Origin: Euprymna scolopes | Taxonomy: Eukaryota | DNA: 64,000 nt | NCBI GenBank assembly: GCA_053919585.1 | Contig: CM132812.1 | Direction: 5' to 3' (one strand) | Part shown: in pieces, positions 4,461-31,033 of the stretch | How positions within the stretch are numbered: the stretch's first letter is position 1 | Layout: every line of letters begins with the position of its first letter | Position numbers and translations under genes: made by a program | The notes under the pieces: generated by a model | What the model saw: only the letters and a program-made list of their open reading frames with translations | Told to the model about the DNA's origin: nothing | The model's database searches: none

Positions 4461-4985
4461 AAATATGTTAAAAAACACTTTAAAATGAGTTAAAAACATA
4501 TTTAATCTGAAAAGGAAACACTAGATAAATGGATAGTCCTTAATCCGCGGAGTTTCGAAGAAATACTTTCCTTCTCATCAGAGGGTAGGAATTAGCAAAA
4601 TGCGGGATCGGATTTTGCATGCAAAAGTATTTGATGAAACAACAAGTAAGTAAAAGATCTTACTTGAAAACAAAAAAAAAGTGAAGCAGAGTGAATATGG
4701 TGAAGAAAAAGGTGATTACACATGAATGGATAGTCTGGTGGAAGATAAATAATCCAGTGACTGTAAAATCCAAATGAAAAACTTCAAGAAAGTTAAAAGA
4801 ATTTCCATTTGTACAAGTAAAATCCAAGGAAATCCCGTAATTTGAAAAAGATGGTCCATAATAATCCAAAGACAGAAATCCATGGAATAATTCACAAAAA
4901 TGTGTACAAGGAAAAAAGAAAAGATTCCAATAATATTAATAAAAGAAAAATAAGATATGCTTTTCACTCTACTTCCGAGACATAG

Positions 4986-11912: not shown

Positions 11913-13278
11913 TCTAATGTATAAAAGGAAATATGTTTGTCTGTATGTCCGTCTCCATATTTTCAAACTCTATATCCTCCGACACTAAAAGTCGCAAAGC
12001 CGCGCTAGACGCATCAAATGATTGTTTTTTTTACGGACCGTTATTTTATGGGTCTTTAACCGGTTAAAATAGATTTAAGGGATTAAAAATGTGTTAAAAT
12101 TGGGAAAAAGTCATTATACATTTTGTAAATTCATTTTGTCTATTTTTTAATTTTAATTTTTAATCAGTTCATATGCGTGTCATCTTGGTACAGTGGTAAC
12201 GTCACCGGCTGTGAGTACTTCGGTTTTGATTCTAACTGATGGCCCTGAAATACGTTTTCTTTTTTTTTACTTTTGAAATCACGACTCTCTAAAATATGTA
12301 CGACATCTAGACAAATTACAATATCATTTAAGCGTATTTTACGCATAGGAAAAGCTTCCCTACCCCCACCTGCTAATATAAAATATAAAAGGCTAAATGT
12401 TTCCATATTTTGAAACTCCATCTCTTTCGAAATTAAAAGTCGCAGAGCGGCGCTAGGAGCCTTAAATTATTGGATTTTTTTACGCACCGCTTTTTTTATG
12501 GATCTTTAGCCAGTTTAAAAAGTTTTTAAAATGTCAAAAGTGCGTCAAAATTAAAAAAAAGTCATTATAGATATTATAAAACTATCTTAGATTATTTTTA
12601 TTTTTTCATTTTTAACTAGTTCATATGCGTGTCACATTATTACAATAGTAATATCACCAGCATTGACTGATACAGCTTTATTTTCGGTTTCGATTCAGCT
12701 GAATAACTAATACTGAATAACCAAAATACTTATATTTTTCATTTTGAAATCACGACTTAATAATAATATATACGAAATATAGACAAATTAAAATATAATA
12801 TTTTACGACCGGGCAAGTCTGGCCGCCCCCTCCCGGTCTAATATATAAAAGGCTATATTCCGCCTGTTTGTTTGTCGCCACATTTTCAAACTATCTCTTC
12901 CGAAATCAAAAATCGCAGAACGGCGCTAGAGGCCTCAAATGATTGGATTTATTGTGGATCGTTCTTTTATGCGTCTTTAGCCGGTTAAAATTAAGTTTAA
13001 TGGGCCTGCAATGACATAAAATTGAAAAATTAAATCGTTATTCATTTTGTACACTCATCTCAGTTTTTTTTTTACTTTTAAGTTTTAATCAGTTTATCTG
13101 CATGCCACAGTGGTAACGTCAACAGCTTAAAATATTACAGTTCTGCTTCCGGTTTCGATTCTAGCTTATGACACCCAATTACTTTTTTTTTTCATAATAT
13201 ATACGGAATCTGTACAAATTAAAATATTATATTTAAGCGTAATATACGCTCTGGCAAAGCCGGGCGCACTCTCGCTAG
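11913..13278 (+). mobile_element. Head-to-tail trimer of non-autonomous Helitron family B (11913-12376, 12373-12841, 12837-13278)
   Basis: Each ~450-bp unit starts (T)CTAAT.TATAAAAGG, shares the AAAAGTCGCAGAGCGGCGCTAG...GATTGGATTT motif and ends in a hairpin plus CTAR. The last unit ends CTGGC-AAA-GCCGG...CTAG|T. Confidence 0.8.
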
Positions 13279-13319
13279 TCATATATATATAGTTTAATAT
13301 GTAGTCATAGATAAGTGAG

Positions 13320-13390
<71 letters not shown>

Positions 13391-13396
<6 letters not shown>

Positions 13397-13511
13397 TGTG
13401 GATCGTTCTTTTATGCGTCTTTAGCCGGTTAAAATTAAGTTTAATGGGCCTGAAATGACATAAAATTGAAAAATTAAATCGTTATTCATTTTGTACACTC
13501 ATCTCAGTTTT
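13391..13511 (+). repeat. ~120-bp near-identical local duplication of 12947-13067
   Basis: ATTTATTGTGGATCG...CATCTCAGTTTT is repeated 444 bp downstream. I saw one mismatch (CTGCAATG vs CTGAAATG). Confidence 0.9.
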
Positions 13512-13605
13512 AGCATATAAGCGACGCTCTTTGTGTAAACAAATCGAGCGGAGGTATTTCGGACGATATCTAAAACATCGTTAAAACTCACTACTCGTTC
13601 AAGCA

Positions 13606-13677
13606 GCCGCCAATAGCGTAATGGTTAGAAGCCTTGACTGCCGTATAAACGGTCGGGTTTCAATCCTAGCTTGAGGT
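13606..13677 (+). promoter_or_regulatory. tRNA-derived Pol III internal promoter (second copy 13892-13963)
   Basis: A-box TAGCGTAATGG (13614-13624) and B-box GGTTTCAATCC (13656-13666) at tRNA-like spacing, with CT-GCC at the anticodon-loop position. The cloverleaf is degenerate, so this is not a functional tRNA gene. Confidence 0.65.
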
Positions 13678-13685
13678 AGTTGCCT

Positions 13686-13740
13686 GTCTAGCCGCACTGA
13701 TGAGCTGTGAAACAGCGAAACAGTACTGTATGTGGATGAC
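13686..13740 (+). ncRNA. Type I hammerhead ribozyme, intact core
   Basis: gtctag-ccgca-CTGATGA-gctgt/gaa/acagc-GAA-acag/ta/ctgt-A^tgtgg-atgac. Stem I ccgca:tgtgg, 5-bp stem II, palindromic stem III ACAGTACTGT. Predicted GUA cleavage after 13730. Confidence 0.9.
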
Positions 13741-13971
13741 TATAGTGCTCCTCACCTTGAGTTGAGCATATTGAGAAGTGAAAAACGAATTATCATTAGC
13801 ATATAAGCGACGCTCTTTGTGTAAACAAATCGAGCGGAGGTATTTCGGACGATATCTAAAACATCGTTAAAACTCACTACTCGTTCAAGCAGCCGCCAAT
13901 AGCGTAATGGTTAGAAGCCTTGACTGCCGTATAAACGGTCGGGTTTAAATCCTAGCTTGAGGTAGTTGCCT

Positions 13972-14026
13972 GTCTAGCCGCACTGATGAGCTGTGAAACA
14001 GCGAAATAGTACTGTATGTGGATGAC
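13972..14026 (+). ncRNA. Type I hammerhead ribozyme, second tandem copy
   Basis: Same as 13686-13740 except GAAAT for GAAAC, giving a U.G wobble in stem III. Predicted cleavage after 14016, exactly 286 nt after the first site. Confidence 0.85.
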
Positions 14027-14053
14027 TATATATATATATATATATATATATAT

Positions 14054-15225: not shown

Positions 15226-16298
15226 CTAGCGAGGGTATCCGGCATTGCCCGGGTGTTTAGAGGTGTGTGTGCTTGGGCGGTGGTAATCAAAACATAAGAA
15301 TAAGCAAAGTAAATATTTTTAATATTAAATATTAAAATGTAAAAACTTTAAAAAATTCGAAAAAAAACCACCCCAAAAAACTAACGTAAGGCAAACGAAC
15401 GATGTTAAATGTAAAAATCGGAAAAACAAAAAAAAAGAAAACGCAAATGTGATGGAAAAAGAAAACAGAAAAACGAACGTAAAACACGTGAAAAATGGCT
15501 TCCGGGTGTTTAGAGGTGTGTGTGCTCGACGGGGGGTGGGGTTGTTAATCAAAACATAAGAATAAGCGAACTAAAAAACAAAACAAAAAGAAAACAGAAA
15601 AACGAACGTTAAAACTAATCTGAAAAATAAAGCGGGGGATACCCGGGCGGTGGGGGAGGGTAATCAAAACATAGGAATAAGAAGTAAATATTTTTAAAAC
15701 TTAAAACTTAAAAAAATCGAAAAAAACACAAAAAAAAAAACTAACGTAAGGATAAACGAACGTTGTTAAATGTAAAAATCGGAAAAACAAAAACAAAAAA
15801 GAAAACAGGAAAACGGACGTTAAAACTTCTTTATAAAATCTGAAAAATAAAAACCAAAAGAAAAACACGTGAAAATGGCTTAAATAAGCCTGTTTCAATA
15901 TTAAAATTTTAAAAATCGAAAAAAAAGAAGACATCTCACACCACGATTCAAACCCAAAACCTTCAGATAAAGACCCAACGCTCTAACCAACTGAGCTAAC
16001 ACGAAATTCACAGTTCTTCACATATTTAAACTAAATCAGGTAATGACGTCTTCTGACGCATGCGTAGAACCGATCTCGTCATGAGAAAACAGTTTTTGTT
16101 GACCCCCCGCCTGTAGAAAAGTGCTGATTTCAGGGTGAAAAAATTAATGTTTTTAGCAAACTTTTAGATATTTGTCGGGCGAAGGAGGGGGCTTTCAGAT
16201 GAGACCAAATTTGTGAATTTTTGTTCTGTCTGTCGAATGTTTTTAGCATACACACAAACATTCATACATACATACATTTTTGCTTTTATATTTATAGA
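15226..16298 (-). mobile_element. Non-autonomous Helitron with internal duplications and a tRNA-like module
   Basis: Minus strand A|TCTATAAATATAAAAGC...AAACACCCGGGCAATGCCGGATACCCTCG-CTAG|T. TAATCAAAACATA.GAATAAG occurs three times. tRNA-like segment at ~15941-16003. Confidence 0.8.
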
Positions 16299-24858: not shown

Positions 24859-25142
24859 NNNNNNNNNNNNNNNNNNNNNNNNNNNNNNNNNNNNNNNNNN
24901 NNNNNNNNNNNNNNNNNNNNNNNNNNNNNNNNNNNNNNNNNNNNNNNNNNNNNNNNNNNNNNNNNNNNNNNNNNNNNNNNNNNNNNNNNNNNNNNNNNNN
25001 NNNNNNNNNNNNNNNNNNNNNNNNNNNNNNNNNNNNNNNNNNNNNNNNNNNNNNNNNNNNNNNNNNNNNNNNNNNNNNNNACACACCAACATTTTCACTG
25101 CATCAAGGCCATTTATTAAGGCATGACTAGCACTCACTTCAA

Positions 25143-25208
25143 GTCAGAAATCGAATCCGCAACTATCCAGTTGATAGTCGACGGTTCTTACTCACTGAGC
25201 TATGGGGC
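25143..25208 (-). pseudogene. tRNA-derived SINE head or tRNA pseudogene
   Basis: Minus strand CCCCATAGCTCAGTGAGTAAGA...GCGGATTCGATTTC has A- and B-box-like motifs at tRNA spacing. Confidence 0.5.
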
Positions 25209-25322
25209 AGCTTTTTTTTGCGCTCCATTTGTTTATTTATAAACAAAGCACATTGCCTTTGCTTGGTAAGCAGCAAGGGATATTATTTTTGACATTGTTC
25301 TTACACCCCCAAAAGAGCAATG

Positions 25323-30050: not shown

Positions 30051-30179
30051 TTATATATATAGTATTTTTAAAATATAATTATCCACTGACACGTGTTTCG
30101 TCGTCTACGACTCATCAGCCACTCTGATGAGTCGTAGATGACGAAACACGTGTCAGTGGATTATTATATTTAAAAAATG

Positions 30180-30555: not shown

Positions 30556-30761
30556 CTTACATAAAGTGTAGATGAGATAAGCCATCGGTATCGTCGGTTT
30601 CAAACCTGATAATAGGGACAGTTTTAGATGCCCATATCAAGTTCTTTTCATCTCTGAGTATCGGCTGAAGAGAATTTTATATGGGTATCTAAAACGGTCC
30701 CCTCTTATCAGGTTTGAAACCGACGATACCGATGACTTATCTCATCTACACTTTCTGTAAA
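30556..30761. repeat. Fold-back palindrome with an extended-stem-II hammerhead-like motif (30660-30733, + strand)
   Basis: Arms ~95 bp. The + strand reads atcgg-CTGAAGA-[44-nt stem-loop]-GAAAC-cgacg-ATA^ccgat. Confidence 0.8.
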
Positions 30762-30762
30762 T

Positions 30763-31033
30763 ATAATCGCGTTGAGACACCGGTTCTTGTCAGATCACCG
30801 AAGTTAAGCAACGTTGAGCCTGGTTAGTACCAGATGGGTGACCATTAGGGAATTCTAGGCGCTGCATGTGCTCTCCGCTTATCTGCGCATTTGTTTCCGG
30901 TTGCCCTGTACTTTACTTGCCACTGTGTTTCAGGACAGGTGAGGTTGGAGATTGCGCACGTCCTGCAACAAAAAATTTCACGCGCAGCAACCCTTCGTGG
31001 GTATCCATAATCTGTTCACGACTTAAGGACCCT

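What the first reader, a model, noticed from the sequence alone, without database searches (positions are those of the whole stretch)
13511..14030. Retrozyme-like module: tRNA-type Pol III promoter fused to tandem hammerhead ribozymes, predicted to release a 286-nt circular RNA
Seen: a 286-bp unit repeated 1.8 times with only two differences. Each unit has an A-box (TAGCGTAATGG), a B-box (GGTTTCAATCC) and, directly after, a full type I hammerhead. The predicted GUA cleavage sites (13730, 14016) are exactly one unit apart. The + strand has no TTTT run in the unit despite the AT-rich context. The unit also has several hairpins: CGCTC-TTTGT/gtaa/ACAAA-tc-GAGCG, ACGAT..ATCGT and TGCTC-CTCA/cct/TGAG-tt-GAGCA. 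Established: metazoan non-LTR retrozymes (newt satellite 2, schistosome Sm-alpha and related families) are short tandem units with type I HHRs that give monomeric or circular RNA, and a short palindromic stem III favours dimeric HHR cleavage. Inference: Pol III starting at ~13606 could read through both ribozymes and excise a monomer that carries its own promoter. That monomer could be circularised by an RtcB-type ligase and mobilised in trans, plausibly by a Penelope-like RT. It may be an undescribed family in this lineage.
Basis: partly seen in the sequence, partly recalled or inferred. Interest (0 to 1): 0.92.

Follow-up and report, generated by a model that had tools for sequence, protein, structure and literature searches.

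The report
Hammerhead retrozyme copy with tRNA-like boxes
This is one young copy of a very abundant, non-coding mobile element that carries a self-cleaving hammerhead RNA motif, a known kind of element (animal "retrozyme" or Penelope-dependent SINE), so it is real and tidy but not a new class.

Summary
Window 13510-14030 is a 286-bp unit repeated 1.8 times with two differences. Each copy has a complete type I hammerhead by inspection (all core bases, three helices, 10-nt palindromic helix III). The GUA sites, 13730 and 14016, lie exactly 286 nt apart. Rfam does not call it at its thresholds (22.4 bits against 48.5).

It is not a one-off. The 5.9-Gb genome holds about 20,500 copies of this ribozyme core. 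About 20,400 copies end at the same point, 14 nt past the cleavage site, directly against (TA)n. About 4,200 continue into another unit. In 14 independent arrays the 3' end is fixed and the 5' end varies, and 10 of the 12 arrays with a readable 5' end have (TA)n on both sides. That is a retrotransposition signature like that of Penelope-like elements, which are abundant and intact in this genome.

Every insertion spans the cleavage site, so the template RNA was uncleaved or religated.

The Pol III promoter is only a motif match: the A box is good, the B box is off at two positions, and no tRNA model hits. The missing TTTT means nothing (P about 0.5). Circular RNA and transcription were not testable. 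The scan has flagged this family several times elsewhere in this genome. Verdict: a new member of a known kind, of moderate interest.

The parts
13510..13795 (+). full 286-bp unit (unit positions 1-286)
   Evidence: TRF period 286; 100% query in genome search
13796..14030 (+). second, 3'-terminal partial unit (unit positions 1-235), ending at the family's fixed 3' end
   Evidence: all 14 independent arrays end at unit position 235
13614..13624 (+). A-box-like motif TAGCGTAATGG (10/11 to TRGCNNAGTGG); second copy at 13900-13910
   Evidence: consensus taken from general knowledge of tRNA-type Pol III promoters
13651..13671 (+). T-arm-like hairpin holding the B-box-like motif GGTTTCAATCC (13656-13666; 9/11 to GGTTCGANNCC); 42 nt from the A box; second copy at 13937-13957
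   Evidence: The commoner family state G at 13668 closes a 6-bp stem. The same odd spelling occurs in other tRNA-like modules of the window
13686..13740 (+). hammerhead 1, type I: helix I 13686-13688/13738-13740 and 13692-13696/13731-13735; core 13697-13703; helix II 13704-13716; GAAA 13717-13720; helix III 13720-13729; predicted cleavage after A13730
   Evidence: all pairs verified, E(HHR fold) -11.3 kcal/mol against MFE -14.7; Rfam 22.4 bits, below threshold
13972..14026 (+). hammerhead 2; predicted cleavage after A14016; C15.2>U keeps a G.U pair in helix III
   Evidence: (16.8 bits)
13720..13729 (+). 10-nt palindrome ACAGUACUGU that can form an intermolecular helix III (dimeric hammerhead)
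   Evidence: perfect palindrome, duplex -13.4 kcal/mol
14026..14030 (+). fixed 3' junction ...GACTATA/(TA)n, 14 nt after the cleavage site; inferred site where reverse transcription started (internal equivalent 13740-13744, CTATA followed by G)
   Evidence: 20,366 genomic matches to the terminal junction 25-mer against 4,240 to the internal one, with reversed-pattern controls at 0
14027..14053 (.). 3' flanking (TA)13.5
   Evidence: TRF
13391..13511 (+). 5' flank: 121-nt segment 99% identical to 12947-13067, ending ...CTCAGTTTT where the upstream copy has a T10 run; either pre-existing DNA or a template-switch chimera
13324..13396 (.). upstream (TA)36.5; would be the 5' target half if the 121-nt segment is part of the insertion
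   Evidence: TRF

Best explanation
Window 13510-14030 is one young insertion of an abundant, non-coding, non-autonomous retroelement. Its key module is a type I hammerhead followed 14 nt later by a UAUA site. It belongs with the animal non-LTR retrozymes and Penelope-dependent SINE-like elements.

Shown:
- The unit is dispersed on most chromosomes.
- Copies end at one fixed position against (TA)n.
- 5' ends vary and often sit at short TA/AT microhomologies.
- 10 of 12 arrays lie inside (TA)n.
- One array has an inverted 5' partial copy.
- The same genome holds thousands of 93-99% identical Penelope-like elements with an intact RT plus C-terminal GIY-YIG frame. These also end in (TA)n a short distance downstream of a hammerhead-like motif.

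Inferred mechanism: a Penelope-like RT/endonuclease nicks (TA)n and starts cDNA synthesis internally at the UAUA just downstream of the hammerhead. It then copies upstream and usually stops early. That yields about 83% terminal fragments (mostly shorter than one unit), about 10-15% two-ribozyme copies like this one, and rare long arrays.

Every insertion contains the intact cleavage junction. A cleaved linear monomer would give only a 14-nt cDNA. So the template must have been uncleaved or religated RNA. I slightly favour a religated 286-nt circle copied by rolling-circle reverse transcription.

A locus with two ribozymes, such as this one, is the minimum that can release a full monomer. Cleavage probably needs the dimeric fold made by the palindromic helix III.

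The A/B boxes may give Pol III transcription, but that step is unproven.
For: Family size and dispersion: 1,749 first-look candidates and 184 scored matches at 90-100% identity, most at 97-100%, on many contigs. Counts with up to 1 mismatch: HHR core 25-mer 20,503, terminal junction 20,366, internal junction 4,240, helix I 5' marker 13,988, B-box marker 5,530, A-box marker 4,263; all reversed-pattern controls were 0. Fixed 3' end, variable 5' end and (TA)n flanks in 14 independent arrays, plus the inverted 5' copy in L011. Youth: 48 variable positions among 67 aligned units, almost all singletons. Family variation spares the catalytic core. The common variants are pair-preserving in helix I (13693 C>U, 13694 G>A) or lie in loop 2 (13711). 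No coding capacity: longest ATG ORF 21 aa. Resident PLE: 15,395 GIY-YIG candidates; an 806-aa frame with RVT_1 plus GIY-YIG; its 3' end ...CAACAATCA/(TA)n lies inside a repeat of its own ORF start; 27 of 30 sampled loci are 93-99% identical. Literature: metazoan type I HHRs sit in 150-450-bp tandem repeats that give circRNAs (PMC7229834). PLEs prefer (TA)n and leave inverted 5' copies (PMC8557442). A PLE RT initiates internally and uses uncleaved RNA (PMC11167929). Retrozymes derive from PLE pLTRs (bioRxiv 10.64898/2026.07.22.740005).
Against: No PLE carrying this ribozyme or tail was found. The sampled PLE family shares no sequence with the unit, and no PLE coding sequence lies within 1.5 kb of any array or in the window. 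At this locus the 5' junction is not in (TA)n. Rfam scores are far below threshold. The circular fold is only mildly more stable than shuffles (z = -1.7), unlike the highly self-paired circles reported for retrozymes. Transcription, cleavage and circles are not shown: the runs laid were contigs, and a 20,000-copy repeat appears in any library that holds some DNA or read-through RNA. Frangieh et al. saw no role for cleavage in PLE insertion in vitro, so the ribozyme may be a protein-binding fold rather than a processing device. The marker counts mix 5' truncation with subfamily divergence (only 218 matches for unit positions 66-90).
Confidence: 0.75

Rival explanations
1. Classical tRNA-derived SINE. 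Pol III starts upstream of the A box and reads through the hammerhead into flanking DNA. This linear, uncleaved transcript is the only template. The hammerhead plus UAUA is just the 3' recognition module for the partner RT. Circles play no part, and arrays arise by copying transcripts of older arrays or by later unequal crossing-over.
For: A box 10/11 and a B-like T-arm at tRNA spacing (42 against 44 nt), P about 0.001 per shuffled unit. The same T-arm spelling occurs in other tRNA-like, T-run-terminated modules of the window. Most insertions are shorter than one unit. PLE insertion in vitro uses unprocessed RNA. Precedent: Sm-alpha/Sj-alpha SINE-like elements with hammerheads.
Against: Array 5' ends (unit positions 1, 6, 21, 27, 40, 43, 44, 75, 102, 104, 112, 135, 175, 213, 248) show no pile-up 5-12 nt upstream of the A box; they tend to sit at TA/AT microhomologies. 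The 147 nt between the 3' end (position 235) and the A box would not be in a single-unit Pol III transcript, yet it is conserved in all arrays. No tRNA model hit. The B box lacks C56.
Confidence: 0.3
2. It is merely a detached pseudo-LTR or 'tail' of an autonomous Penelope-like element. The tRNA-like part and the ribozyme are that element's own terminal sequence, and the 286-bp unit has no independent life as a monomeric RNA.
For: Retrozymes are close relatives of PLE pLTRs in Xenopus. An unchecked note on this genome reports a GIY-YIG remnant followed directly by a tRNA-type promoter and a hammerhead (s1-295599). Most copies are short tail fragments.
Against: None of the 14 arrays, nor the window, has PLE coding sequence nearby. 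The abundant PLE family sampled has a different tail and no similarity to the unit. Arrays of up to about 33 identical 285-bp units with no ORF are not what a pLTR-ORF-pLTR structure gives.
Confidence: 0.15
3. An ordinary satellite or segmental tandem duplication that happens to contain hammerhead-like and box-like strings, with no RNA-level function.
For: Rfam scores are below threshold. The window is rich in tandem repeats.
Against: About 20,000 dispersed copies with one fixed end against (TA)n and 5' truncation. The hammerhead descriptor is about 1000-fold enriched over shuffles. The core is invariant while loops and helix I vary in pair-preserving ways.
Confidence: 0.02

Closest known systems
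Metazoan non-LTR retrozymes (Cervera & de la Pena 2020, PMC7229834)
   Same: Type I hammerhead. Non-coding AT-rich unit of 150-450 bp (here 286 bp, 43% GC). Dimers up to large multimers, dispersed in thousands of copies. Helix III short and palindromic, so cleavage is expected as a dimer. No LTR, PBS, PPT or ORF.
   Different: Here most genomic copies are sub-unit 3' fragments. The 3' end is fixed 14 nt past the cleavage site and abuts (TA)n, a detail I did not find in my searches of that paper. The unit carries A/B-box motifs. circRNA is not shown. The predicted circle is only weakly structured (z = -1.7).
Sm-alpha / Sj-alpha SINE-like elements of schistosomes (Ferbeyre et al. 1998; Laha et al. 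2000; cited in PMC2770079)
   Same: A tRNA-related Pol III-type head combined with an active type I hammerhead in a short, very high-copy retroposon (over 10,000 copies); also found as tandem repeats. Details of Sm-alpha anatomy rest on my own knowledge, because the original paper is not held.
   Different: No sequence relationship was tested. Sm-alpha relatives are recognised as tRNA-Gln-like by tRNA tools, whereas this head is not recognised by ARAGORN or Rfam. (TA)n targeting is not a described Sm-alpha feature, to my knowledge.
Penelope-like elements and their pLTR hammerheads (PMC4209133, PMC8557442, PMC11167929)
   Same: A hammerhead near the point where reverse transcription starts. Internal initiation. 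(TA)n or AT-rich targets. Partial tandem copies. An inverted 5' copy (L011). The ribozyme is expected to work as a dimer.
   Different: No RT/EN ORF. The ribozyme has canonical helices rather than the 'minimal' PLE form. No similarity to the resident PLE family sampled here, which lacks the CX2-5CxxC linker that Craig et al. associate with (TA)n targeting (by eye).

Membership tests
Hammerhead ribozyme, type I | Conserved core C3 U4 G5 A6 N7 G8 A9 ... G12 A13 A14 ... A15.1-U16.1, H17 | tested here: met
   CUGAUGA 13697-13703, GAA 13717-13719, A13720-U13729, A17 = 13730. No family variant at 10% or more in these positions.
Hammerhead ribozyme, type I | Three helices, with helices II and III closed and helix I open | tested here: met
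   Helix II 5 bp, helix III 3 bp plus GUAC loop, helix I 5 bp plus internal loop plus 3 bp; all are standard pairs.
Hammerhead ribozyme, type I | Score at or above the Rfam gathering threshold for a hammerhead model | tested here: not met
   No hit at gathering. Best is RF00008 at 22.4 bits against 48.5; the second copy scores 16.8.
Hammerhead ribozyme, type I | Mg2+-dependent self-cleavage | not testable with these tools
   Needs in vitro transcription. Raw RNA reads could show ends at 13730/13731, but the one read-laying run went on contig runs.
Metazoan non-LTR retrozyme | Short (150-450 bp) AT-rich non-coding tandem unit, each with a type I hammerhead, from dimers to multimers | tested here: met
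   286 bp, 43% GC. Arrays of 1.8 to about 33 units. Longest ATG ORF 21 aa.
Metazoan non-LTR retrozyme | Dispersed multicopy family with signs of retrotransposition | tested here: met
Metazoan non-LTR retrozyme | Expressed as monomeric linear and circular RNA | tested here: inconclusive
   14 RNA-Seq libraries from 4 studies hold 23-43% of the monomer's words, and contigs of an RNA library cover it. Contigs cannot show transcription, ends or circles for a 20,000-copy repeat.
tRNA-derived SINE | 5' head derived from a tRNA with functional A and B boxes | tested here: inconclusive
   A box 10/11, B box 9/11 with C56 replaced, spacing 42 nt; joint chance 0.1% per shuffled unit. No cloverleaf: ARAGORN finds none and Rfam tRNA gives no hit at E up to 10 in 95 nt.
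tRNA-derived SINE | Full-length copies begin at the Pol III start site just upstream of the A box | tested here: not met
   5' ends of about 20 arrays are scattered, with none at unit positions 88-98. The sample is small and biased towards multi-unit arrays.
tRNA-derived SINE | 3' end shared with a partner autonomous element | tested here: inconclusive
   No similarity to the one PLE family sampled.
Penelope-like element (autonomous) | RT with GIY-YIG endonuclease ORF between pseudo-LTRs | tested here: not met
   No tblastn hit of the resident PLE protein in the window or in any array locus.

The most novel reading that the evidence does not exclude
The unit is a self-contained Pol III retrozyme. 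Its internal A/B boxes drive read-through transcription of arrays with two or more ribozymes. Dimeric hammerheads release a 286-nt RNA that still carries its own promoter. A tRNA ligase circularises it. A (TA)n-targeting Penelope-like RT then starts at the UAUA 14 nt past the ligation junction and copies the circle by rolling-circle reverse transcription. This would make the ~20,000 junction-spanning insertions a genomic record that circles, not linear RNAs, are the retrozyme transposition intermediate.
Probability: 0.2. Interest if true: 0.65.

Novelty: new member of a known kind. Interest (0 to 1): 0.4.

Why it matters
Retrozymes are thought to move through small circular RNAs copied by Penelope-like reverse transcriptases, but the transposition intermediate has not been shown.

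This family offers a clean natural data set for that question:
- It has about 20,000 very young insertions.
- All of them start at one defined site 14 nt past the ribozyme cut and contain the intact cut site.
- They sit in a genome that still has intact Penelope-like elements.

This shows directly that cleaved linear monomers were not the templates. With raw RNA reads or polymorphic insertion sites, the choice between circle and uncleaved transcript becomes testable.

It also adds a second lineage, after schistosome Sm-alpha, in which Pol III-type boxes travel with a hammerhead.

For annotation, it explains a large class of (TA)n-associated repeats in this genome.

Tried and rejected
- Rfam at gathering thresholds over the whole window found no hammerhead and no tRNA. 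Sensitive scans gave only sub-threshold Hammerhead_3 hits, which read the motif as a type III with almost no helix I. I rejected that reading in favour of type I.
- ARAGORN found no tRNA. The Rfam tRNA model gave no hit on the 95-nt head alone or on 12.5 kb holding three other tRNA-like modules.
- A generic core pattern with a fixed 12-nt helix II found nothing because this helix II plus loop is 13 nt.
- blastn-short of the unit against 30 PLE loci found no similarity.
I did not try to read those letters by other means and used fully specified pattern counts instead.
- Those 25-mer counts proved to be confounded by subfamily divergence, so I do not give a quantitative truncation profile.
- Read laying went on four contig-only runs. 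It gave useful variant data but no information on RNA ends, strand or circles. Raw-read RNA runs surfaced only afterwards.
- RNAcofold of two ribozyme segments gave an uninformative structure.
- Using the upstream paralogue (12947-13090) as an 'empty site' failed: there is no convincing homology after the array.
- The absence of TTTT was rejected as evidence for Pol III read-through (P about 0.5).
- The Ferbeyre 1998 paper is not held.
Full report
**1. What is at 13510-14030**

Tandem Repeats Finder reports a 286-bp period, 1.8 copies and 99% matches. The two copies (13510-13744 and 13796-14030) differ at two positions, 13661 C>A and 13721 C>T. Among 67 aligned units from 13 loci covering independent arrays, both differences are unique to this locus, so they arose after or during insertion.

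Each copy contains TAGCGTAATGG and, 42 nt later, GGTTTCAATCC (GGTTTAAATCC in copy 2). A hammerhead follows directly. I checked every proposed pair by script:
- helix I: CCGCA 13692-13696 with UGUGG 13731-13735, then a UAG/AU internal loop and GUC/GAC
- core: CUGAUGA 13697-13703
- helix II: GCUGU-GAA-ACAGC 13704-13716
- GAAA: 13717-13720
- helix III: ACA-GUAC-UGU 13720-13729
- A17 at 13730

The second site is A14016, exactly 286 nt later. The ribozyme-competent fold costs -11.3 kcal/mol against an MFE of -14.7 for the same 59 nt. The 10-nt helix III sequence ACAGUACUGU is a perfect palindrome that gives a -13.4 kcal/mol intermolecular duplex. This is the architecture Cervera and de la Pena describe for canonical metazoan type I hammerheads that cleave as dimers in tandem transcripts (PMC4209133).

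Rfam does not call it. There is nothing at gathering thresholds, and the best sensitive hit is Hammerhead_3 at 22.4 bits against a threshold of 48.5. That alignment reads the motif as a type III with virtually no helix I, so I prefer the type I reading.

**2. Chance**

The descriptor 'CUGANGA, a 4-6-bp hairpin, then GAAA' occurs five times in window 1-36000 against 0.005 expected from shuffles. The other three belong to different hammerhead mini-elements.

An A box with at most one mismatch and a B box with at most two, 30-60 nt apart, appear in 0.1% of dinucleotide shuffles of the unit.

**3. The family**

The window lies in a 5.9-Gb assembly with 925 contigs. The chromosome-size contigs are numbered to at least 46. 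Together with 'mollusc metagenome' labels on RNA libraries that hold the sequence, this fits a decapodiform cephalopod (compare PMC13218726). That identification is an inference, not a result.

The unit has 1,749 first-look candidates. The 184 scored matches are 90-100% identical, most at 97-100%, and lie on many contigs, in arrays from under two to about 33 units.

Counts of fully specified 25-mers, with up to one mismatch and all reversed-pattern controls at zero:

| 25-mer | Matches |
|---|---|
| Ribozyme core | 20,503 |
| Terminal junction ACTGTATGTGGATGACTA/TATATAT | 20,366 |
| Internal junction continuing into the next unit | 4,240 |
| 5' strand of helix I | 13,988 |
| B-box marker | 5,530 |
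| A-box marker | 4,263 |
| Marker at unit positions 66-90 | 218 |

The last figure shows that the window's exact variant is a small subfamily of a heterogeneous family. It also shows that these counts mix truncation with divergence. Contigs from public runs confirm subfamilies with different sequence upstream of 13518, 13559 and 13642, for instance an A-box region spelled TAGTGTAATGGTAAGAAG.

On the first 74.6 Mb of contig C1 there are 100 exact terminal junctions, and about 13 arrays there hold an exact internal junction. On all of C1, 25 of 34 arrays with an internal junction have exactly one. So the two-ribozyme form in the window is the commonest multimeric form, but multimers are a minority of insertions.

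**4. Insertion anatomy**

In 14 independent arrays, every one ends at unit position 235 (...GGATGACTA followed by (TA)n). The 5' ends are at unit positions 1, 27, 102, 104, 112, 135, 175, 213, 248 and others. The 5' end is readable in 12 of the 14. Ten of those 12 have (TA)n immediately upstream as well, often with the first bases of the element being TA or AT. L011 has an inverted partial copy of the ribozyme tail at its 5' end, itself abutting (TA)n.

Four features stand out: a fixed 3' end, 5' truncation, a microsatellite target and occasional inverted 5' copies. This is the pattern described for Penelope-like elements: (TA)n preference and inverted 5'-truncated copies (PMC8557442), and internal initiation of reverse transcription on both strands (PMC11167929).

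The window's own copy is one of the two exceptions at the 5' side. The array starts at ...CTCAGTTTT|AGCAT, the end of a 121-nt segment (13391-13511) that is 99% identical to 12947-13067, where a T10 run follows. A (TA)36 lies directly upstream of that segment. Either the array joined pre-existing DNA of an older ~450-bp tandem repeat, or the cDNA switched templates to the 3' end of a T-run-terminated RNA. In the second case the whole 13397-14030 would be one chimeric insertion flanked by (TA)n on both sides. I could not decide between these, and the 'empty site' comparison failed.

**5. A direct mechanistic consequence**

The terminal junction 25-mer spans the predicted cleavage site, and the insertion boundary is 14 nt downstream of it. 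A hammerhead-cleaved linear monomer would begin at U13731, so a cDNA started at the UAUA (13741-13744) would run off after about 14 nt. All ~20,000 insertions contain the ribozyme upstream of that point. Their templates therefore had an intact 13730|13731 bond: they were either never cleaved or religated.

This fits a monomeric circle, whose single ribozyme with a 3-bp helix III is expected to be inactive, copied by rolling-circle reverse transcription. It fits equally well an uncleaved linear transcript, as Frangieh et al. found for a PLE in vitro. I slightly favour the circle for two reasons. Arrays contain the 147 nt that lie between the 3' end and the A box. Array 5' ends show no pile-up at a Pol III start site. 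Both points rest on a small sample biased towards multi-unit arrays.

**6. The tRNA-like head**

- For: the A box is 10/11, and the spacing (42 nt against 44 in tRNAs) is right. In the held copies the commoner state at 13668 is G (34 of 58). It closes a 6-bp stem around a 7-nt loop TTTCAAT, a T-arm-like hairpin. Two other tRNA-like modules in the window, each followed by a T-run, share the unusual spelling GGTTT[C/G][G/A]AT. This suggests a lineage-specific tRNA-derived SINE head.
- Against: ARAGORN and the Rfam tRNA model recognise none of them. No acceptor or anticodon stem can be drawn. C56 of the B box is replaced.

Function as a Pol III promoter is possible but unproven.

**7. The likely helper**

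GIY-YIG domains give 15,395 candidates. Of the 30 sampled loci, 27 are 93-99% identical to one family. [quoted passage not shown] By eye it has no CX2-5CxxC linker. Its 3' end repeats the start of its own ORF (a pseudo-LTR) and stops at ...CAACAATCA/(TA)n, about 70 nt after a hammerhead-like motif whose core has an extra U. So the genome has a young, (TA)n-inserting PLE with the same 'ribozyme, then short spacer, then initiation site' layout.

That PLE shares no sequence with the unit. No PLE coding sequence lies near any array or in the window. Whether another PLE family carries this exact ribozyme and tail remains open.

**8. RNA**

Fourteen RNA-Seq libraries from four studies hold 23-43% of the monomer's sampled words. 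Contigs of a poly(A) RNA library cover the family, with depth peaking over the ribozyme. For a 20,000-copy repeat this does not show transcription. Contigs also cannot show ends, strand or circles.

The variant table is still useful. At 10% frequency or more, no variant falls in the catalytic core. The common ones in the ribozyme are 13693 C>U (C-G to U.G), 13694 G>A (G.U to A-U) and 13711 in loop 2. This fits selection on the fold in master copies, although the family's youth limits what it can show. The predicted 286-nt circle folds at -71.9 kcal/mol against -64.3 +/- 4.6 for shuffles (z = -1.7), which is not the strongly self-paired rod reported for other retrozymes.

**9. Comparison and novelty**

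The element works like, and meets the testable criteria of, a metazoan non-LTR retrozyme (PMC7229834). It also resembles the schistosome Sm-alpha/Sj-alpha SINE-like elements, which join a tRNA-related head to a hammerhead. It is not an autonomous PLE.

No held paper links hammerhead ribozymes with cephalopods beyond a PLE survey and a twister study, so the family is probably undescribed. The scan itself has flagged tRNA-headed hammerhead elements many times on other pieces of this genome, and one was followed up as ordinary PLE debris with an odd spacer.

I rate it a new member of a known kind. Its value lies in the clean junction-spanning insertion record and the availability of intact PLEs and raw RNA data, not in a new principle.

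Noticed in passing
window 30070-30175: Head-to-head inverted pair of minimal hammerheads (CUGAUGAG-UCGU..GACG-CGAAAC-ACGUGU-C|AGUGG) forming a ~100-bp hairpin mini-element in AT-rich DNA with (TA)n runs close by. It is a different ribozyme family from the one studied, in the PLE-style inverted arrangement (also first-reader note s1-295727).
   Followed up: partly
window 4530-4600 (- strand): A third hammerhead-like motif (CUGAUGAG AAGG..CUUC GAAAC UCCGCGGA...) with a palindromic helix III, lying next to a run of N.
   Followed up: no
window 13103-13190 (+), 15895-16015 (-), 25100-25215 (-): tRNA-like modules with A and B boxes. The first two are followed by T-runs, and the third runs into a stretch of N. 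None is called by ARAGORN or the Rfam tRNA model. The first two share the unit's unusual T-arm spelling GGTTT[C/G][G/A]AT.
   Followed up: partly
window 12300-13513: An older tandem repeat of about 450 bp (71-88% identity between periods) that contains the 13103 tRNA-like module. Its last 121 nt (13391-13511) is 99% identical to 12947-13067, far better preserved than the rest.
   Followed up: partly
window 36798-64000: A 121-bp satellite, about 223 copies at about 93% identity, filling the last 27 kb of the window.
   Followed up: no
window 30753-30870 (+): A 5S rRNA match (61.9 bits, above threshold) with mismatched terminal helix pairs. It could be a gene, a pseudogene or a 5S-derived repeat.
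   Followed up: no
L063:6000-9046 (- strand) and 26 similar loci: A young, abundant Penelope-like family: 806-aa open frame with RVT_1 plus C-terminal GIY-YIG (CCHH). Its pseudo-LTR ends at ...CAACAATCA/(TA)n inside a repeat of its own ORF start. Its hammerhead-like core has an extra U (CUUGAAGA).
   Followed up: partly
G000:C1:29353485-29353533 (- strand), from coordinates only: The helix I marker abuts the terminal junction there. This implies a copy that lacks the 28-nt ribozyme core between two ACTG repeats.
   Followed up: no
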